DNA of 63,418 nt, counting the filler, from Choristocarpus tenellus KU-1152 (taxonomy: Eukaryota; Protista; Phaeophyceae): assembly GCA_964200185.2 (NCBI GenBank). It is 7 parts of 7 records of this genome, joined end to end, with 100 filler letters (N's around TTAATTAATTAA, not from the genome) between each part and the next. Parts side by side here need not be neighbours in the genome. Positions count along the whole stretch, not along the records: positions 40,687 to 54,449 come from CAXNAD020001375.1; 6 more parts are not named here. One strand, written 5' to 3'. This document shows positions 41,083 to 54,449 of the stretch, in pieces (the first letter of the stretch is position 1; the number at the start of each line of letters is the position of its first letter). The position numbers and the translations under genes are program-made. The notes under the pieces were generated by a model that was not told the DNA's origin, searched no databases, and was given only the letters and a program-made list of their open reading frames with translations.

Positions 41083-44000
41083 CTTGGCAGCACAAACCTC
41101 TCCTTTGTGGACAACTTGATACACCTGTGGAATTATCACCAAATAACGGAAAACAAGATGGATATGGATGTTGTGCACGCCATTAGCAAAATCAACATGC
41201 TCCTTGTCAGTGTAATACTCACTTAAAGGGTTACCCTAGAACATTCATCCACGCTTGATCTATAATGGACGATTAATAGCTTTCGCTTTAACTTTGTAAA
41301 CCTACAGAGCGTTCTGCTACCACAATAATTTGTCTAAAGCTTCGATAAAATATTTTATCCCTCAAAATTGTTAGGGCTTTAAATCTCAACCAGTGATCTA
41401 TTACGCTATCTTTAAATAATGTCTGCTTCCAAGCCTACCTTCTGATTATTAAAGATACAAACTTTAGTCACCTTATTCATTAAAAAAATAATGGACCTTA
41501 GCTTTAAGTTTGGGCTGTTTCCCTTTAGAACATAGATCTTAGCATCTATGTTCTGTCTGCCCTAAATAATAAATAAGTATTTAACACATTTCATATTTGG
41601 GTAGTTTCACTCTATTGCATTCATTGCCCTCCATAAGGCTGGCAATGTCTGTAGTCGGGGCTACCTTTGACGCCCTTTCCTCTATAACTAATGGCAATTA
41701 GTTTCAATTACTCAGTTACTATTTGCAAAGAGACGAACCTCCCTACTGTACCTCCTTCTCACTGTAGTAGTTTGATCTCTTGAACCAGAGAAGGCAAGAG
41801 ATGAAAGAAATTTGGCAATAGAAAGAAGAAATAGATTTTTTGTTACTACGGAAGTACAATACTGTATTCACTTACAATATCCTTAACCATCAAAACACTC
41901 TAGCCCATTTGCAAATAACACATCTTGTCCAACAAACCACTGGGCCCATTTGTTGCGTAACTTCCATTGCCTTTGACAAGAAATGAGGTCACTTGCTCTA
42001 TATAGTCTGTTTAGAGAGTGCTTTGTTGTGTACTGGTGTAGTGATACGGTGTTGAGTTGTGTTATCAAGAGTTACTTTTTCCCAAGTGCAAATTGATGAC
42101 AATCAACAAATATGATTACATCACAACAGTTTGTCGGAGAAACGCCATACAATTGGTCACATTCTTGAACCAACAGAGCGTGAGCTATTAGTAGCTAGAC
42201 TGAGGTGTGGACATTTCTAACTATTACATACCCCCCCCTTCCCTTCTAGAAGTAGTCCAACCACACAGCCAAACATCGTTGAGAGGATAGCTGGCCCAGA
42301 AGGTGATTTTTTGGTTCTGTGGTGTCTGGCAGGGCCCTGACCTGCGATGCTTTCATTTGTTTAGAATTCTCTGTTAGCCTCCTTGAAAACCAAACTCATG
42401 CATAGACCTCACAATTACACACGTACGTCTTGCTTGGCCACCTGCATTTTGCTCCTGCAAGGAAGGCATTCAACCACCCAGGCACAGCTATCCCCTGATC
42501 CTGTCCTCCTCATGCTGCTGGACCAAAACGCCTGCTAGGTGGTGGAGCTTCTACTTCCTCAAGACACTATGTTGTTTTTCTTTCCTACTGGCACTGCTGG
42601 AGCACAGTGGCTACTAAATGGAGAACCTTTCCCTTTTCTTCCCCCTCCCGACACGGTCCCTCCACTGTTACTCACGCACAGAGCTGTGCCTATAAGCATC
42701 CTCCAGTACAACATCTTGATCATGGGATGTTGGTAGGACCCCACTGTGGTTGTTGCAATTGAGAAGCAAAACTACTCAACAGGATTGTCACATCTTCGTG
42801 TGAGAGTGAGTGAAATTCTATACACGAATGATGTTTTGTCCAAAAGCGTGAAGAAATCGTTGCAAAAGTGAAGTGACCACACTCCCACCCCTGTCCCTAT
42901 GGTTGCACTGACAAGAGTGTGGATGCTATAACTCCCATCAGCACATTCTACATATCGAGAGGAGTGATGAAGGGGATTTCTTACCCCAAAGCACACACAT
43001 AGACCCTGACTGACACCCTCACATATTTCATTTTTAGGGGTAGCAAGTAGGTTACAAAAGTACTTCTTGTCATCAGCATGGTCGAAAAACAAACTTTGCT
43101 TCCCCACAACTTGAGAGGAACCCAAAACAATGAATGAGTAACGCGCATTGGTCACTGAGGGCACTGACTGCAAACCAACTCTATCATCCCAGAGGTACTC
43201 TCGCTGCCCAATGTGTTGGGCTGATTGCAAACAAAGGCAAGTACCTCCACAATGCAGCCTAGTACCATGCTGGAGAAATTTTGAGATTGCACAGCTTGCC
43301 ATTACAAAATTTAGGGTACGGGTTTGTGTCTCTGTGTGCATACTTGAACATTACGTAGGATCACTCACTCACCCACTGCACCACTTGTTAGACTACCTAC
43401 CTTAGAAGCTGTTGCACTAGCAATAATTGTACTGCCAACTGTCCATGCCTTACTTCTTGCTTTGGGTTCAGCCATTCCACTGCTCGCCGCTTCACGTCTT
43501 GCCTCAATTCTAGTCATGGTCCCGTACAGATATTCCTCGGCAATGAAGCCTTGCCACATTATTATTTTGGTCTGGTATCATAGCGGTAAGCAACTGACAG
43601 TATACTATATATATTTGTATAATCCATAGTGCTCACCACTTGAACTCTGGATAATCAAAACCAGATTTCTATGCCAAGGAGTCTGGCGCCATTGAGGTTC
43701 AACCCACGAAATCAAATAGGGAACAGCCTCCATTAAACAGGAAGCAACAAGGACTGCCAACCTACCTACCTAGTCACAGAGATTTATTGGGGGGGGTGTC
43801 TGAACTATAGTGTCAAGAGAGCACGTGGAAAAATACCAAGTAGTGCTCCATCCCATCCCTAAGAGGCAGTCCGTGCATAGTGCTCAAGTTCTCATCAACT
43901 CTTCAAGACAAAGATTGTGGTGAAGTACTGGTATATGGGGGTCACCTCACAGGAAATTACCACAAGCGCTAGCGTTCTGAAGTGAACGTTAAATCATTGA

Positions 44001-47000
44001 TGAGTGTAAGTTATATTGACTAAAACAAAATTCAATGTGCTTCATTATGATGGAAACATGCATGCACCACATGAATCAAGGTGTGCAAGTTTCCAAACTC
44101 TGTGAGTAGAGCACTCAGCAAGCATTTGCGCAAAAGACAACCAAGGGTGTTTTACTGGGCTCAACAGTTAGCATGCCCACTATCTGCCATATGCCCGCAG
44201 CCCACCCCATGGCCTAGCCATGCTGCAGTTGATGGTCGTGGACTCGGCTATGTTTGAACTTGCTTGTAGAGGCCTGGCTAGCAGCACCAGCCGTGTTGAA
44301 GTTGCAATATCCAGGACTGGGCCGTGAATATTACATTGATGGCTGGTCAGGTAATATTCATTTGACACTCAGATCGGCCACGTCATTCCTATGGTTCCCC
44401 ATTCACCATTTACTCTACTGGTATCTTGTATCCTGTACTACCACTGGAAATACTAAATATATCATACAATAGTAGGGTGGCTTTCTATTTCAACATATAC
44501 ATATCTTGATACTTCTAGTATTATTTCCTATTTTCAATTTCCTATCTTAGGCTACTAAAAACTAACAATAAGACGTAACCAAATCCATAAAATAATAAAT
44601 AGAGGGTTCAGTCATTTTCCATGTGTGCACGCCTCCTGGCATTCTCATTGCACATACATATGGATGCATCCTTCATGATTTTGTACCAAGAAAGTCTAGA
44701 GATAAACAGAAAGAGCATCATCCATATGCACACACAACTTTACCCACCACATTTTGTAAAAATTTTGCACTTTTCGCAAGGAGTGGCTGAACAAATTCAA
44801 AGGACCTAGTGCACATGACCCAAACATGTCAGAGAATGCTAAACCCTGTCCGGGCAGTGGACATAGAAGGGTACAATACCCAGTGGATACATAGTCTGGA
44901 CATGCCAGAAAGTATTCAACCCAATCTGACCAGCAGACATGGATCACAATCTGTCGGACAATCGTATGACCGGTTTTGCCAGCAGACATGGGCTGGTTGA
45001 ATACCTACTGGACATGAACCGGGACATATCCGATAATTGTGGGACCGGTCCAGATGGCAGACGAGGCAATTTTAATTTGTTGACCTGATGAAACACCCGG
45101 AAAATAACCAATCAAAATTTAACTTTCAATTTTCGGTTTCGATTATTAATCAAGCAACAATCGTATTTCTTGATACTTTCTTAGGTGAGACTAGAATCAA
45201 AGTAACAATTTTTCCCTTGACAAGACTAAATGAGAAACGGTTCAACTTCATCCACTCTTCCTGTGACAAAACCAACACGATCTCTTCTCTCTCTCCGAAA
45301 CTAAATAAATAAACAGTACTAAAAAAGAAAAAACATTTCTATACCATTTTTTCCGTTCATCCTGCCTGGCCTCAAACATCTTTTTCGAAAACATCACAGC
45401 TCACCGAGGAATACCCCCCCACTGCAAAAGGCTTGCTGGAGGTGAAGGTGAGATCCTTTTTCTCGATCTGAAGCATCTCCAGCCTTTTTTTGCGCTGCTC
45501 CTTGGCTCTCGCCGTGTTGTTCTCGCTTGAGCCCGACCCACTAAGAGCACCTTCCAACATGTGACTGAACTGTGACAACCGAATCTCAAACATCTCCATC
45601 TGTTCCTTGGCAGCAGCTTCCTGTCGTATCTGCCCCGCTATGATCATGTCAGCCTTCCCATCAATCTCAAGGACCACATCCTTGACCTTGCCCACATTCC
45701 CCAGAAGCTCAACATTCACACCCACCTTGAACAGGCAGTTCGGTTGGGATGGGCAAAGCATGGGTGAATTGTAATATTATACAAGTTGGTGTTCACCTAC
45801 ACAGCAATACTACTGATGGTATAATCACACTCAAGGTGCTGAGCAGAAGGCATAGTGAAAGACACTAAAACAGTGACGTAATCAATAGGGTTCCAGCCTA
45901 CAATTTAGCAGGTAGAATAATAGGTGTGGCTTTGCCAGAAACTGTCCACGTTACTAAAGTTAGGGTTAGGGCCAAGGAATTGAGGTTCACAGTCAAGTGG
46001 TCAACTTCTGATTCCTTTATAGGTGGAAATTGGACATTTTCCAGATATATCTATTCGGCGACATACACACAAAGAGATCATATTTGCTTAGAATAAACAC
46101 TAATAAAATACTGCCTGATTGATCCTAGGCACACTGTGAAGCACATAGAATAAGTCATGAATGATGAATTAGAAGGAAACAAAGAAAAAAGAGGCGTGTG
46201 TACTGTCCACTGATGTAACCCACAAAAAACATCCTCTTATCATTGAAGAACACTTACATCAAGAGTGACCAGGGCCTTCTGCACAGCATTATCAGCCTCA
46301 TCAAAGTGGTGTTTGCACGTCCGAGACATTGCAAACTGCGCCAACATGGACTTATTTCCATACTCTACCAGAAGCTGTGATCGAGAGACAATACCAAAGC
46401 AAGAACAAGAAAAAAGAAAAAAAAGTTCAATTGCAAAGACATCAAATAATATAAAAATGTAATTGATATTTCAGTTATTGTTTTCATTGTAAGTATTTGG
46501 TCAACATTACACTAATCATGGTAAACTCCTTCAAACTTCTGTCAAGAGAATCTATGCCTGTTTCCACAAAGGTTAGGAAGGTTCAACAGATCAAAATACT
46601 TGTAACAGATATATCTAGAGTCGTACGAAGTCTGTTGTTGGTTTGAGATTCAAAGTAGAACATTAGCCAGTGGAATAACCCCCTGTTGGGCCCCAAAGCA
46701 TGCCACATAAGAGCACCCTATGTGTTGTTCATCTTCCACCTCAATTCTACTTATCCATGTACTTCTACTGCATCACACTTTCAACAGAGTGTGGAAGGGC
46801 AAACATCAGCCAGCAAGGTCAGGAATACGCTCTACATTATGTTGCAATTCATTAAACGCACTCGAAACACCAAAAAATTATAAACTGGATCAGCAAGTAA
46901 CACTTGTCTCGTATTTTTCCTTACTGTTCCTCTTTCACCGAGTCCTAACCTGTGGTACTGACCAATGGAGTGTACGGTCAATGGTATTACCCCATACATA

Positions 47001-50000
47001 CAAGTACACATACACACATATACACATGCATACATACATACTTACGTCATCAAGGATCTTGATCTTGACCAGCACCTCACATCCTAGAGATCGAAGTGCT
47101 TCGGACATGGGTGAAGGATTCGCCTGAAGGAGCGTGTCAACACCAAGTTGGAGGTGGTAAAGAACATAAACTTGACATTCCAATGTAATAGCCAAAATTG
47201 TGCTATTTAATTTCAGGATCAACAATTACAAGAGGTTAAAGAGAATATGCAGTCCATGATACACCTCAAATATATTATTGTAGTACCTGCCACTAATAAA
47301 AATTAATAGACACAAAACAATAGAACTCTCTGTCATTGTAGTCCAACACAACCCACCCCTTCCCTTCTACCTGTCCGAAACGTCATAACACCCTCAGTTA
47401 CTTCTATTATGCTTCAAAATACTGTACTTCCCTACCTATTTAAAAGAGAAGTGTAACAAACTTTTTTCTTCCATGTTTCTATCTGCACTTTATGAAAATG
47501 TGTAACCCACTGCCAGATAAAATAGAGTCGGTTTTGAAGCCAACTATTTCTCCCACAGTTACGAAACTACCCACCTACCTAGCAACAGCCATCAAATCTC
47601 GTTTAGGGATCCTCACAAGTGATTGTCTCTAAATATGAAAAACAGGTCACTCCATCTCACCCCAAAAACACCACAAATGCGTGTAATTTAATCTCCATAA
47701 ATTTAGCAGAGAGTACACCAAAAAATGAGGGCAACAAGAAGCACTATCAAGATAATAACAGTAGTAGGAACAATGATACACTAATAATAAAGTTATTACT
47801 TCAGAAAATATCAATAACTTCTAGCAATACTGCTGTGCTCTCAAGTACTACTGTAACACTCTGTTGGAAATATTGTTGGACATATACACAGAATAGCTAG
47901 CAACGGTTGGGTGGGTGGTTCTATTGTACGTGGTACTATTACTGTTACCAACTGCTGCAACAATGGGTAAGTAAGGGTTGGCAATAATCTTAAATAACAA
48001 CTACCACACAAAAACCATGCAACTTCAAACTCACTTCCAGCGTGGTATGTCACTCCTCTTGAGGTATCCATTATAGTCATTTTGAATTCATTAAAAGGAT
48101 GTTTCTTGCTTTGACTAAGGAAGATGGCATCATTTGAAAACGGGTATCGATAGCAATAACTTGCTTCTTCAAACTAAATGTACCCACAAAACAGTCAAAA
48201 TGCACTCCACTAGCTGCAGATTGTCTCTATTCTTGCACAGGCAACCAAACATAACATAAGTGTAACATAGACTGTCGAGGTGATGGAAAGGCTACCTATT
48301 CATCCACTTCGAACTGTCTCATGCTGGCGAATGAAATGGTGAAAAAGACTTCAGAAAATATATTTATGGCATGGATTCTGGACTCCATACAAACATGAGC
48401 TCTTCATATTAAATGTGTAGTTTATAGCTATAGTAATGCCTAACACCACTGCAACATAAAATAGCATAATAGAACAAAAAGGTGTGTGCTTGTGTCCGTG
48501 GTGGGGGTGGGGTTCATGACTGATATGTCTCTTTCTCATACCTCAAAGTGATGTTCGAGCTGCACCATCACTTGCTGTAGGTTTTTGGCCCATGTTCTGA
48601 TCTTCTCCATATTATCCTGTTCAAAGGAGATGAACAAAAAACAGGAAACGTAAAAAAAAAGAATTTCATACTATTTAATAGCAATAAAGAGGGACTGCAA
48701 TCCAGCAGTGAAACATAAAAAACAATATATTACATAGTACTGGGAGTTGTAGCTATCGCCAAACATCCCCCCACTCCCCTGCTGCCGCTATTGTCATTCC
48801 ACTCTAATTCTCCATGGAAAAAAGTCTGGCACACAAGAGATTTGAACTCACGATAGGTTTGCAGATACTTGCAAAATGGTTCTGTTCTGCGGACACAGAT
48901 TTGCAAGAAAACCAAAAACGAACATTTGGTGTCAGATTTGAAAGTGACGAGATCGCATACATAGCAGTCATGCAATATACTGCACAAAAACAGTAATACT
49001 TACCCAGCAGCATTCAGCCAGCAGTCAGATTGATTTCGTATGGGGGGATTTCATTTACTCGCAAGGCAAAGAACAAATGCACCAAAAACTCTAAAGGCGA
49101 TCCATTCCTTCCCAACTACCTGTTCCTTAAACTGACATAATGGCTTCACTCTGCCCCACAATAATAGTTACTATTTTGATAAATCCCTGTACCAGAGATT
49201 TTTTGCATGCCCAAATCAACTATCCAAACCACTCACATTCTCCATTTCTTCCACATATTTAAATAAACAAATTTTAAATTGCAATCATTTTACTGTTCTT
49301 CAAATATTAATTAAACAATATATACATTAGGCACAACCAGACAGCACACACTACATGAGAAGGAAAGTTTGAACAGACAGGTTAAGCAAACAACTAAACA
49401 GAACTACACTCCCACATGTAATACATATATCCACAAGACAAAAACAATACACAAGAAAATGTACAGTATCTCTTCCTGCTGCTACATTTTCAAACACGCA
49501 AACACACACCTTCATGTCTTTGTGGGCTTGCACATGCTGCACGACAGCATCTAGCAGACCGTAAACATCCCGGATCCACGGTACATGCTCTGCCACAGTA
49601 CCAACAGCTCTCCACCCCCCCGACATTGCACCTACAGCAGCCGCAGCTCCAACACCAGCGGTAACCCCAGCCACTGTAGCACCTACCCTACTCCGACCTG
49701 CATTCCCTTTGTTGGCTGGGACTTCTGTCCTGGGTGTTTCAGAGAACGCTGGAGTGATGTTTGTTGGTACTCGAGAAGATGTTGGAGGCACATCAGAGTG
49801 ACTCTCACTCACATGTGATTGTGTGTTGTGATCTGAATGTGGTGCAGACGAGCTCTTTCCTCCACCTACCCTCATATGAAAATAGATGCAAATAAAAGGA
49901 GGTGTGCATAGAAAATGAGAGGAGTAGTAAGAGAGGGTAGAGGTGGGGGTGAGAACAGTTGATCAGTTAATCAGTTGATCATCCTAAGCGGTCAGTACTA

Positions 50001-52469
50001 TGCATGCAACTGTCCAGCCCTACTGATAACAATAGACTGGGTATTTATGTAATGTCTTGTACAGAAAACCACTTGATTTGTGCAAATGGTTGGGAAAGAT
50101 TACCAATAAAAAAGTATCTTACATAAACATCGCACTTTTCAACAAAACAAAAAAACAAGTGAAGACACTGAGTGAAAGTATCTTAGAGGGTACGAGTTTC
50201 TCCCTTTTTGTCCATTTGGGGCTTGGCTTCCCATGTTTGTTTTATGACATTTTCCTACTCCAGAATGTTTCGGAGTAGGTAAGATGTAAATATTATGAAA
50301 AGGTGTGTTTGGAATAAGTATATTGAAACTTCCTACCAAACGCAATAGCCAAAATTGTATCAAAATTGCAACATTGGATTTTGGCCCCCAAATGGACGTG
50401 GCTCTACCCTTCAAGTTAATTTGGCTCACTACCATATAGTGTAGAGTTGATAGAGGAAATACCTTGCATTGTATCAACATCAGAAGACAAACTTACCCTC
50501 CGCTTACAAAACAGACCTATGCGTTGGATTCCTTTAAATATTTTACATTAAAAAAATATGTCTCGCCCATGTTCAGCAACCCTAACCCACCAATCCAAGG
50601 GCGCTGTAGAGGCAGCTCAGTCTACTTCAACTGATCTAGCCAACTCACCCTACTGCCTTTGGTTGATCCCGGTGTGCTCTACCTCAAAAGCGTTCCCCCC
50701 CAGTGCCCGTAACACCTGATTGTACCTCTAAAACATAATCTTCCACACCCTCTCAAGCATGTAGCCGTTATAAGTGTGGAACATGCTAGAAACCCACCCT
50801 ACAAGTTCATTAACAGGGCCTAATGCTCCGCCCAAACCCTGCTCTTCAGAGTTGAAAAAAAAAAAAATCATTGGTGTTGAGATCCGGCAACCGCCCTGGC
50901 TACATCCCGCCCCTCATGCTCTGTCCCTCCTGCCCGGCGGCGTTCTGCTTCCTCCCCCCCCCCTTCCCCNNNNNNNNNNATTAACAGGGCCTAATGCTCC
51001 GCCCAAACCCTGCTCTTCAGAGTTGAAAAAAAAAAAATCATTGGTGTTGAGATCCGGCAACTGCACTGGCTACATCACGAGCTTAATGTTCTGTCCCTCC
51101 AACCCTGCTGCGTTCAGCTTCTGCACAACACCCTTGCCCGTATGCGTTGTTGAGCTGTCCTGCTGCATGGATGCCCACTCCAATTCCAGCCACGGCATTT
51201 TGCCTTGATCGCTGGCAACAGCTGCACCATGTACCACTCCAGGTACCACTCGGTGTTGACGGTGACGTCGATCTTGTACTCCTCACTGTTTGTGTGCTGC
51301 GCTGTAGTCTGTTGCGCCTCCTTCATGACGCAAATCCACCAGATCCCGATATTGCCGTTGAAATCATGGGAAGAGTCTGGGTGCGAAACGGTGGAGGTGA
51401 CCGTCACCTTGGATATGCGACTCTTGTGCTTGCACCTTCATCGAGCCCACCTTTTCCTCCCCCAGGAACAAGCGTACCATCTCTCATTCACGGATGAGGT
51501 AGAACCATGCCCTGTCCATGTTAATGGTGTTGAGGCCAGTCCTGTAGGTTTTGCAGGTTCGGGAGATCTGGTCGAGGATGAAGTCCACCCTGTCCTTGTG
51601 AGAAAACGAAAGGCTAGGGGTGACACATCACTGAACCCTCATTGCCCCCATGGCTTCCAGCCAGCAATGAAGCTTTGAGCTTCCGACTGACTGCAAGGCC
51701 CAATTTGGCGAGCTTGGAGGAAAGTTGGTTGATAATCAGCGTGCAATTGCTGGCATTGATTTCCCGTATCTTTGCTTCTTTCATTAGCGTAGAGTCCAAC
51801 AGCCATCCAGATTGTGCTTGTGATCTCAGGGAGACAGCATTCCCATTGTATAACTGTTCTTTGACACATCTCCACACCTGTCTAGGGTAGGGTCTCTCTC
51901 TCCCACTCCAAACTCTTTCACCAATTTGGACCCCACACCCCTCGGGAGCCTCTCTCATGAGAGCCAATGCGTAACACAGAGCAAGTGTGATCCAATATTC
52001 CTCATTCGGCTCGCAGTTCTTTCCCAAAGATGGTGATCTTTGTGCCGGTGACAACAGGCTGTGAGGGCTCGCCGTGGGGGTTGTGAGAGTGTTGTGCAGC
52101 TCCACGCTGCAGCAGGAACATAAAAAAATTATAAAAATATGCCCTGTCTGTGTTACATTCTTCCGGAACAACTTCAGAACATAATTACTTGTAGAATTCT
52201 TTGAAATTTAGTTTCTCTGAGAACAATATTCCAAGGAATCCAACGCAAAAGTCCATTTGGTAATCAGAGGTCATCCCGAAGAGCTACAACTTAATGACCC
52301 AGACTTGGAACAGAGGCGTATATATTTACGTAAGGAAGCCCACCCCAGATGGAACCACAAAGGGTTGCCCAGGATCTCAAAGCAAGAATATAGGAGCCCA
52401 ATTATCATTTAGATTGGAATCTTACATACAGATCATTGAGCAACTGGTGCTCATATTTCCATCTCACCC

Positions 52470-52503
<34 letters not shown>

Positions 52504-54449
52504 CTCACCTGACCGGGCAACACTCTCCTTGAAATCAGGAGGAGCATTAAACCTCATGGGACGATCATCAACACTACCCCCTCCACTCGTTCCACCTTTG
52601 CCCCCTGTGGCATTCTTGTAGGAAGGTGGAGCTTCAGTCTTGACTTCTCCACTATACTCATGAGCTTCTAGGTGTGGGTAAAACAAGTAGAATGCAAACA
52701 AGAAAGAAAATTAATTCTGTTCATCACACAATAAAAAATTATACTTGAGCCCTGTACACCAAACAAGCATGAAACTGCAGAGCCATACCGACATTCCACG
52801 AAAACATTCACCATCTGCGACAATAAGACTTGATCCCTAGGCTGCAAGGGATGACGAACAAATAGTCAAGCGCGGAGAGGACAATCATCAATACATACCA
52901 GAGAAATGTCACCTCTACACCAAATGTGATCAAAGCAAACTCGAAGCATCTTCTCTGCCATATACAGTCACCTGATATTCCCACTGCAGCCCTACCTTGA
53001 AAGGAAGATGCACTCATCCCGTCCAGAGTGCTGGGGTGACGATTTTGGCCTTTTGGCTTTAGCCAGATGCAATACATTGCAATAGCTATTAGAAACAGCA
53101 CAACAGATCCACCAATAGCTACAATCATGATGATGTCCGATGACCCACTGTTGCTATCATTGGTCACTACTTGGTCATCGTCTTCTAATACCCTGGAAAC
53201 ATCATCATCATCTGCAACAAAGCACAAAAGGGCTTCAGGGATCAGAACATACTCTTCACTGTTGTCAAACGAGTGTTGGACCCGTCACTTCAGCTAGCTA
53301 CCAGGAAGAGGTTGAACAAAACCAGAACTGGTACACCATACCAAACCAGGAACTAAAGTAGTGTCAGGAAGGTGTTTGCGGGTACATAATACACAGGAAC
53401 TTTCCCAGTTAGAGTCAAAATATGAACGTAGTCCAACTTCTCACATGAAACTACAGCAGGAGCAATGATGTTTAAATTGGTCTGACCAAGGAACAAGAAA
53501 AAAATAATCTGTTTCTTGATGAGACCAGACTAAATGGGAAACAAGGAAATGACCTTTGCACTCAAGATACCTGGGGTTCCTATCCTGAAAAATTGCATGC
53601 AAAGAAACTGGGGTCGTCCAATCCATCCTCTTGACCCAAAGGCCTTTAAGGACTACTCTTAACAGAATTCTAAACACTGTTACTGCCTGTTTGTACTATT
53701 TGTTCACAAACTAAAAGCAACATGGAATTGTTTGTGATTGATAGAACTTCTGCCTGGTTCCCAAAGTTAGATCACACCATAAAAATGGTGGCAAAAGGCA
53801 ATGGGACCGATGGCATTCTGCTAGCACTAATCCACTATTCTAGAGAGTTGAACCACCAAATATTCAAAAAACTGTATTTTTGAACATTAGTCATAAACGT
53901 ACCAAAATCTGCCATAACTCACAATGATTTTATAGATAACAAATCACGATAATCTCAAGATATAACTAAATCACAAAAAACTCCAGTATCAGTTAGAGAA
54001 AAGAGAAAATCATAGTTTGTTCCTAATACCATGGAGGGCATCAACTTTTACAAAATACTGATATCCAGATATGTGTGAAAAAGCAATGTTGGAAGAAATA
54101 AATAAATGGGCTTCTCAACTAGATTGGCTGTATCACAACATTTACAACTAAGGAATGACGAAACATGTCCCTACTAAGTCTTGCAATTGGAGCAGGAACA
54201 GAAGAAATTATAATCTCTTGAGAGTCAACATCTCTGCTTCACGCTGCTTGGTGCTTGGGAGCTAAAGGCTTTTGCTTTCAAGAAAACAGCAAGGTGGGTT
54301 CTTCCTACTGGGTCCATACCTTGGAGTAACGTGGGATCGAAGAGATTCTCTACCCACAACACCTCACCATCATAATATGATGACGACAGCATATCCAAGT
54401 CACCATCTCCATCCAAGTCTGCTGCCGAAAGACCCCAAGGGAAATCTTG
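41083..54449 (-). CDS. Receptor-like kinase: FG-GAP repeat - TM - MLKL-like four-helix bundle - brace - kinase N-lobe (partial at both ends)
   Basis: Nine exons: 54449-54320, 53211-52972, 52667-52509, 49865-49510, 48616-48542, 47123-47046, 46374-46258, 45725-45405, 41124-41083. All are GT-AG with phases 1,1,1,0,0,0,0,0 and no stops. Motifs: AADLDGDGDLDMLSSSYYDGEVLWVEN (FG-GAP); IIMIVAIGGSVVLFLIAIAMYCIWLKPK (TM); helical bundle VPWIRDVYGLLDAVV...YGNKSMLAQFAMSRTCKHHFDE; LTFTSSKPFAVGGYSSVYQVVHKGEVCAAK (kinase I-II). Confidence 0.82.
41277..41582 (-). pseudogene. NUMT: fragment of mitochondrial large-subunit rRNA (rnl) in an intron
   Basis: ccagtgatctattacgctatctttaaataatgtctgcttccaagcctac is the reverse complement of the GTPase-associated centre. 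ggaccttagct...tgggctgtttccc...ttagca follows in the bacterial-type LSU order. The AT-rich divergence fits mitochondrion better than plastid. Confidence 0.82.
50170..50427. mobile_element. MITE family A, copy 4 (TSD ACT)
   Basis: act|gagtgaaagtatcttagagggtac...tacccttcaagttaatttggctc|act. Confidence 0.86.
50496..52271 (-). mobile_element. Decayed Tc1/mariner of the plant/oomycete DD39D type with TIRs, in an intron
   Basis: TIR ta|ccctccgcttacaaaacagacctatgcgttggattcctt matches aaggaatccaacgcaaaagtccatttggtaatcagagg. Frameshifted transposase motifs: INMDRAWFY, FNGNIGIW, LLPAIKAK, PDLNTND. Confidence 0.8.

What the first reader, a model, noticed from the sequence alone, without database searches (positions are those of the whole stretch)
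41083..54449. Candidate receptor-coupled MLKL-like protein: FG-GAP ectodomain + TM + four-helix bundle + kinase in one polypeptide
Seen: nine short exons spread over 13.4 kb of one contig, mostly invisible in the ORF track, splice in phase with no stop. They give an FG-GAP (integrin-alpha/VCBS propeller-type) repeat, one TM helix with basic residues on its C-terminal side, a ~170-aa low-complexity linker, a ~125-aa amphipathic helical segment (AEHVPWIRDVYGLLDAVVQHVQAHKDMKDNMEKIRTWAKNLQQVM...LLVEYGNKSMLAQFAMSRTCKHHFDEADNAVQKALVTLD), a helical brace and kinase subdomains I-II. Established: 4HB-brace-(pseudo)kinase is the architecture of animal MLKL and plant MLKL-like proteins, and related helical domains execute cell death in fungi; those proteins are cytosolic. 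Brown algae independently evolved receptor kinases. Inference: the helical segment looks like an MLKL N-terminal domain, so this may be a single-chain sensor-executioner linking an extracellular adhesion/recognition propeller to a cell-death-type module. I do not recognise this architecture as characterised.
Basis: partly seen in the sequence, partly recalled or inferred. Interest (0 to 1): 0.85.

Follow-up and report, generated by a model that had tools for sequence, protein, structure and literature searches.

The report
Seaweed receptor kinase with MLKL-like bundle
This is a brown-seaweed cell-surface receptor kinase whose inner part carries a four-helix bundle resembling the cell-death module of the animal necroptosis protein MLKL; the same unannotated bundle sits in the published seaweed receptor kinases we could check, which suggests a testable immune role for a family whose function is unknown.

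Summary
The nine minus-strand exons are real: GT-AG, in phase, no stop, 498 aa. An RNA-like run covers exons 1-5 and shows junctions 1-2, 2-3 and 4-5. Junction 3-4, across the gap, was not seen directly. It is supported by conserved intron phases in relatives, no coverage upstream of ATG 49875, and matching version-specific depths on both sides. The gap is probably a false 170-bp duplication inside a mariner remnant.

The gene is a brown-algal receptor kinase. Relatives with RCC1, LRR and SRCR ectodomains have the same TM-linker-bundle-brace-kinase layout. QAD types share the bundle exon's size. Published tables annotate no bundle and, in the text held, list no FG-GAP or RCC1 class.

The bundle is a four-helix bundle that is MLKL-like by ESM features (0.93), sub-threshold Pfam MLKL_N hits and structure (Z about 10-11). 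That score ties with generic bundles, and a second model did not single out MLKL. Relatives keep catalytic kinase motifs, so this is not a true MLKL.

Most likely it is a receptor kinase with an autoinhibitory or oligomerising bundle-brace switch, as in wheat Pm13. A tethered pore or Ca2+ executioner is possible (about 30%).

The parts
54320..54449 (-). Exon 1 (cut by the piece's edge): last FG-GAP/VCBS-type beta-propeller blade of the ectodomain; phase-1 donor
   Evidence: PF01839 E 4.9e-5, above cut-off; covered and spliced in X2
52996..53211 (-). Exon 2: acidic stalk, single TM helix, basic stop-transfer residues; phase 1-1
   Evidence: KD 2.93; joints e1-e2 and e2-e3 in X2
52509..52667 (-). 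Exon 3: low-complexity cytoplasmic linker; phase 1-1
50497..52270 (-). Decayed Tc1/mariner element in intron 3 (TIR arms 50497-50542 and 52225-52270); holds the 10-N gap with a duplicated ~170-bp stretch (50808-51121)
   Evidence: mariner call rests on recalled transposase motifs, Pfam gave no hit
49510..49865 (-). Exon 4: linker, Gly/Ala-rich hydrophobic pre-helix and helix 1 of the bundle; phase 1-0
48542..48616 (-). Exon 5 (75 nt): bundle helix 2
   Evidence: (joint e4-e5)
47046..47123 (-). Exon 6 (78 nt): bundle helix 3, first half
   Evidence: same size and phase in four relatives
46258..46374 (-). Exon 7 (117 nt): end of helix 3 and helix 4
   Evidence: (59% to P0002)
45405..45725 (-). 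Exon 8: brace helices and kinase glycine-rich loop
41083..41124 (-). Exon 9 (42 nt): kinase subdomains I-II with the catalytic lysine; rest of kinase lies beyond the piece
   Evidence: 42-nt exon also in Discosporangium

Best explanation
One expressed gene for a single-pass brown-algal receptor kinase: FG-GAP propeller outside, TM, ~170-aa flexible linker, then an MLKL-N-like four-helix bundle, brace and a TKL-group kinase. Shown: exon chain, expression of exons 1-5, family layout. Inferred mechanism: ligand (wall polysaccharide or microbe, unknown) clusters the receptor; the bundle-brace module, which at rest packs on and restrains the kinase or mediates oligomerisation, is released; the active kinase trans-phosphorylates and signals, probably in defence or cell-wall surveillance. 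The family probably arose from a cytosolic bundle-brace-kinase that acquired a TM and swappable ectodomains (inference from shared layout, not from a rooted test).
For: Exon chain and RNA joints. Exon 8 alone finds only brown-algal kinases among credible hits. Nine Ectocarpales proteins and one Ascophyllum locus are RCC1-TM-bundle-kinase, with the same intron phases from TM exon to helix 4 in the two genes mapped. LRR receptor kinases carry a homologous bundle (hhalign E 1.2e-4, 94). A poly-A-tailed metagenome contig encodes SRCR-TM-bundle-kinase as one ORF (Pfam MLKL_N E 7e-6). These kinases form one clade in a quick tree (SH-aLRT 94) and keep Lys, HRD/HGD, DFG and APE. The bundle is not net basic and is not at a free N-terminus. 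In Pm13 the bundle does not kill; the kinase does (PMC11297308).
Against: Junction e3-e4 not seen directly. The window's own kinase beyond subdomain II is missing. The closest relative (P0002) shows no TM or FG-GAP within 10 kb upstream, and no other FG-GAP receptor kinase was found. No functional data exist; autoinhibition is argued by analogy only.
Confidence: 0.48

Rival explanations
1. Tethered sensor-executioner: ligand-driven clustering and autophosphorylation free the bundle, which oligomerises and inserts into the plasma membrane to pass Ca2+ or kill the cell, merging receptor, RIPK3-like kinase and MLKL in one chain.
For: ESM features top out on MLKL_N clusters for both subfamilies (0.93); Atlas model TM 0.65 to an MLKL_N protein and 0.64 to MCAfunc; VIA Z 11.0 to MLKL 6zvo over 136 of 144 residues including the brace helix, with MLKL, Rx-CC and AtMLKL3 at Z 9.4-10.1. 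A Gly/Ala-rich hydrophobic stretch before helix 1 is conserved in the window and the RCC1 subfamily. AtMLKL bundle+brace is cytotoxic (10.1101/681015). Ectodomain swapping is typical of immune receptors (own knowledge).
Against: Z values tie with THATCH/talin bundles; the LRR-type model returns only generic bundles; Pfam hits are below cut-off; bundle is internal, 115-214 aa after the TM, and not net basic; Pm13 precedent.
Confidence: 0.3
2. The bundle is a generic four-helix scaffold or adaptor (talin/vinculin/Cbl-like), unrelated to MLKL, that docks partners or the cytoskeleton for a developmental or mechanosensing receptor.
For: Top VIA hits include THATCH, talin and Cbl bundles; no Foldseek, PDB-sequence or Pfam match passes threshold; profile comparison with a bona fide MLKL_N protein is weak (E 0.22; E 0.028).
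Against: Language-model neighbours are consistently MLKL_N/MCAfunc/RPW8; weak Pfam hits of two relatives point to MLKL_N as best family; bundle-brace-TKL order matches MLKL; an MLKL_N kinase is sister to the clade in the quick tree.
Confidence: 0.15
3. Scaffold artefact: an FG-GAP-TM gene and a cytosolic bundle-kinase gene were joined through two copies of the mariner at the gap, or exon 4 starts its own gene at ATG 49875.
For: The gap lies in a multi-copy element (depth); no read or contig spans it; joint e3-e4 not listed; DNA-run depth is higher left of the gap than right; P0002 lacks an upstream TM; cytosolic family members exist.
Against: Both TIRs and one colinear element with a simple overlap; phase-1 donor and acceptor match the family pattern; X2 has zero coverage at 49893-50091, so no 5' UTR before ATG 49875; window-type spliced contigs have depth 198.9 (e2-e3) and 198.4 (e4-e5), and the second version about 300-410 on both sides.
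Confidence: 0.07

Closest known systems
Brown-algal receptor kinases, LRR and QAD beta-propeller classes (Denoeud et al., 10.1101/2024.02.19.579948; PMC3268121)
   Same: Ectodomain-TM-TKL kinase; kinase of the closest relative groups with the LRR class; LRR members carry the same bundle, QAD members share the 192-nt bundle exon size.
   Different: FG-GAP ectodomain, not in the held text of Table S10 (cells and file were cut); different intron positions; belongs with an RCC1-ectodomain subfamily also not found in that table. The paper annotates members only as 'SP, LRR, TM, kinase' and never mentions MLKL.
Wheat Pm13 / MLKL-K (PMC11297308)
   Same: MLKL_NTD bundle, helical brace and an active kinase in one chain.
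   Different: Pm13 is cytosolic/nuclear with no signal peptide, TM or ectodomain; independent origin.
Animal MLKL and plant AtMLKL1-3 (10.1101/681015)
   Same: Bundle-brace-kinase-fold order; bundle superposes at Z 9.4-11.
   Different: Those are cytosolic pseudokinases with the bundle at the N-terminus; here it is internal and membrane-tethered, and relatives keep catalytic motifs.
Fungal HeLo/Goodbye/BaMLKL effector domains (PMC9815663) and plant MCAfunc
   Same: Nearest ESM neighbours of the bundle.
   Different: Found on NLRs, amyloid-triggered effectors or channels, not on single-pass receptor kinases.
Integrin alpha and brown-algal integrin-like proteins
   Same: FG-GAP repeat outside a single TM.
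   Different: Repeat is followed directly by a short stalk and TM, with a long kinase-bearing cytoplasmic part; no Ig-like leg domains.

Membership tests
Brown-algal receptor kinase family | Repeat ectodomain followed by one TM helix | tested here: met
Brown-algal receptor kinase family | Signal peptide | not testable with these tools
   5' end lies beyond the piece's edge
Brown-algal receptor kinase family | TM part and kinase part on one transcript | tested here: inconclusive
   joint e3-e4 not listed; indirect support from phases, coverage and version depths
Brown-algal receptor kinase family | Kinase groups with the Ectocarpus receptor-kinase clade | tested here: inconclusive
   window has only subdomains I-II; proxy P0002 groups with RCC1 (99) and LRR types (94) in a quick tree of 28 rows
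MLKL (animal/plant) | Four-helix bundle of MLKL-N fold | tested here: inconclusive
   four-helix bundle predicted in two proxies; Z 11.0 to 6zvo tied with THATCH 11.1; LRR model does not list MLKL; ESM 0.93
MLKL (animal/plant) | Pfam MLKL_N above curated cut-off | tested here: not met
   no hit for window exons or RCC1 type; 16.8 and 26.0 bits vs cut-off 27 for P0024 and P0020
MLKL (animal/plant) | Helical brace between bundle and kinase | tested here: met
   helices 141-148 and 159-185 in proxy model; aligned with MLKL brace helix
MLKL (animal/plant) | Catalytically dead pseudokinase | tested here: not met
   relatives keep Lys, HRD/HGD (one HRE), DFG, APE; window keeps G-loop and Lys, rest not on the piece
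MLKL (animal/plant) | Cytosolic, bundle at the N-terminus | tested here: not met
   bundle lies 115-214 aa after a TM in relatives, about 170 aa in the window
MLKL (animal/plant) | Bundle permeabilises membranes or kills | not testable with these tools
   needs experiment
Integrin alpha | FG-GAP propeller repeats | tested here: met
   one repeat; number of blades unknown
Integrin alpha | Ig-like leg domains and short cytoplasmic tail | tested here: not met
   short acidic stalk, over 400 aa cytoplasmic part with kinase

The most novel reading that the evidence does not exclude
The independently evolved receptor kinases of brown algae (LRR, QAD, RCC1, FG-GAP ectodomains; an SRCR form in another alga-like eukaryote) are single-chain receptor-MLKL fusions whose tethered bundle forms a pore or Ca2+ channel on ligand binding, i.e. 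a surface-receptor cell-death or Ca2+ module not known in animals, plants or fungi.
Probability: 0.3. Interest if true: 0.92.

Novelty: new variant of a known kind. Interest (0 to 1): 0.68.

Why it matters
Brown-algal receptor kinases are cited as a hallmark of independently evolved multicellularity, but their function is unknown and they are drawn as plain ectodomain-TM-kinase. A conserved MLKL-N-like bundle and brace in the LRR, RCC1 and FG-GAP classes (and by exon size QAD) points to an origin from a bundle-kinase and gives a direct test of an immune or Ca2+ role. The work also adds two ectodomain classes (FG-GAP here, RCC1 in relatives) not found in the held text of the published catalogue. 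No paper in the library links MLKL to these proteins; automatic database tags may exist and were not checked.

Tried and rejected
Searches were exon by exon, and folds used relatives (P0004, P0022) as proxies.

Blank or uninformative results:
- Pfam on exons 2-8: nothing significant.
- PDB sequence searches with bundle profiles: nothing significant.
- Foldseek: no E below 0.001. Atlas fold search of the LRR model: generic hits only.
- Homolog search with the P0002 bundle: itself only.
- Metagenome and viral contig scans: blank.
- No FG-GAP or TM upstream of P0002 within 10 kb.
- Exon 2 versus the stalk/TM of P0007: not significant.

Rejected readings:
- P0003 and P0005 as relatives: low-complexity chance hits.
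- Integrin membership.
- A separate gene from ATG 49875: no upstream coverage, phase-1 acceptor pattern.
- True MLKL membership.

The careful tree did not finish; only the quick tree is cited. Five kinases were left out of it because the motif used to cut the domain was not found.
Full report
Observation. Exon 1 is an FG-GAP repeat above Pfam's cut-off. Exon 2 holds an acidic stalk and one TM helix. The gene is cut at both ends by the piece's edges, so the signal peptide, the other propeller blades and most of the kinase are missing.

Gap and continuity. The 10 N lie in intron 3, inside an element with inverted ends whose broken frames show mariner-like transposase motifs (motifs recalled from memory, no Pfam hit). 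A ~170-bp stretch is repeated on both sides of the gap, as expected for overlapping contig ends. Three runs of one study hold the stretch. One of them, X2, is not on record as RNA but lies on exons 1-5 at about 400-670 and at 0-22 on unique introns, and shows joints e1-e2, e2-e3 and e4-e5. Joint e3-e4 is not listed; the tool reports reads cut at the repeat next to the exon-3 donor and 92 hidden joints, so it is untested directly. Indirect support: X2 has no coverage just upstream of ATG 49875; contigs of the window's own version have depth 198.9 at e2-e3 and 198.4 at e4-e5, and a second version about 300-410 on both sides. Contig depth is a rough measure, so this is support, not proof.

Relatives. 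Exon 8 alone retrieves brown-algal kinases. Nine Ectocarpales proteins have RCC1 propeller, acidic stalk, TM, linker, the same bundle and (where complete) a kinase, and an Ascophyllum locus fits the same plan. In the two genes mapped from TM to bundle, the TM exon and linker exons end in phase 1, the helix-1 exon goes from phase 1 to 0, and 75-, 78- and 117-nt exons follow, exactly as in the window. The Discosporangium gene P0002 is closest (it also has the 42-nt kinase exon) but shows no TM or FG-GAP in 10 kb upstream. No second FG-GAP receptor kinase was found; the searches are word-limited and capped.

The bundle is family-wide. The published LRR receptor kinases carry a homologous bundle between linker and kinase. 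One of them matches an entry of Denoeud et al. Table S10 annotated only 'SP, LRR, TM, kinase'. QAD-type genes in that table share the 192-nt exon size that encodes helices 3-4 in the LRR gene, and three cytosolic members show the bundle in their printed sequence. A poly-A-tailed metagenome contig encodes SRCR-TM-bundle-kinase in one ORF. In a quick tree these kinases form one clade (SH-aLRT 94), with an MLKL_N-bearing kinase next to it (89), and they keep the catalytic motifs. The sample is small and search-biased, so no order of events is claimed as shown.

Is it MLKL-like? For: ESM features give MLKL_N clusters at 0.92-0.93 for both subfamilies, and the Atlas model matches an MLKL_N protein at TM 0.65. 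Two relatives have MLKL_N as best Pfam hit, below cut-off. The proxy model (pLDDT 61) aligns to human MLKL 6zvo at Z 11.0, rmsd 4.3, 136 residues including the brace helix, with mouse MLKL, AtMLKL3 and Rx-CC at 9.4-10. Against: these tie with THATCH and talin bundles, below the tool's bar of about 13 for helical bundles; the LRR-type model (pLDDT 72) returns only generic bundles; sequence searches are blank. I put MLKL/HeLo-like homology at about 0.8. It is not a member of the MLKL family: the kinase looks active and the bundle is internal and membrane-tethered.

Mechanism. Shown: layout, expression of the first five exons, conservation. Inferred: ligand binding clusters the receptor and relieves a bundle-brace restraint on an active kinase, as proposed for wheat Pm13, where bundle and bundle+brace do not kill but brace+kinase does (PMC11297308). 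The bundle is not net basic and lacks a free N-terminus, which fits this reading (0.48). A generic scaffold bundle (0.15) and a misjoin (0.07) are less likely.

Novelty. Brown-algal receptor kinases, including a beta-propeller class, are known, so this is a new variant of a known kind. What appears unreported in the papers searched is the MLKL-like bundle in the family and the FG-GAP and RCC1 ectodomain classes. The library lacks most subscription papers and the supplement was cut, so absence is not proven. Interest 0.68.

Noticed in passing
P0001, P0006-P0013, P0015; loci L002, L004: An RCC1-propeller receptor kinase subfamily (Ectocarpales, Ascophyllum; bundle also in Sphacelaria) not found in the held text of the published receptor-kinase table.
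   Followed up: partly
L005:1029-4886 (P0020): Poly-A-tailed, high-GC3 metagenome contig encoding SRCR repeats, TM, MLKL_N-like bundle (E 7e-6) and kinase in one ORF; source organism unknown, perhaps another ochrophyte.
   Followed up: partly
window 48500-54449: At least two, possibly three, versions of the gene, up to about 10% different in introns, with indels in the stalk and linker and some amino-acid changes; alleles or recent paralogs, not resolved.
   Followed up: partly
window 50170-50410: Very high-copy short repeat (summed depth 1e5-1e6) with short inverted ends, MITE-like, in intron 3.
   Followed up: no
window 50497-52270: Decayed mariner with a probably false 170-bp duplication and a poly-C contig end at the gap.
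   Followed up: yes
Table S10 of 10.1101/2024.02.19.579948, Ec-21_001020 and Ec-21_001070: Family members listed as plain 'kinase' have an N-terminus that looks Hsp70-like by eye; another swapped sensor domain on the same kinase family.
   Followed up: no
P0032 (Chrysoparadoxa australica): TM plus a divergent helical segment before a kinase of the same clade; may be a degenerate bundle.
   Followed up: partly
L001:10001-10486 (P0002): First exon of the Discosporangium model lacks the conserved pre-helix motif and looks mis-started or degenerate.
   Followed up: partly
window 41125-45404: The 4.3-kb intron 8 holds a 189-aa ORF (42772-43341) with no Pfam hit; probably repeat-derived or chance.
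   Followed up: partly
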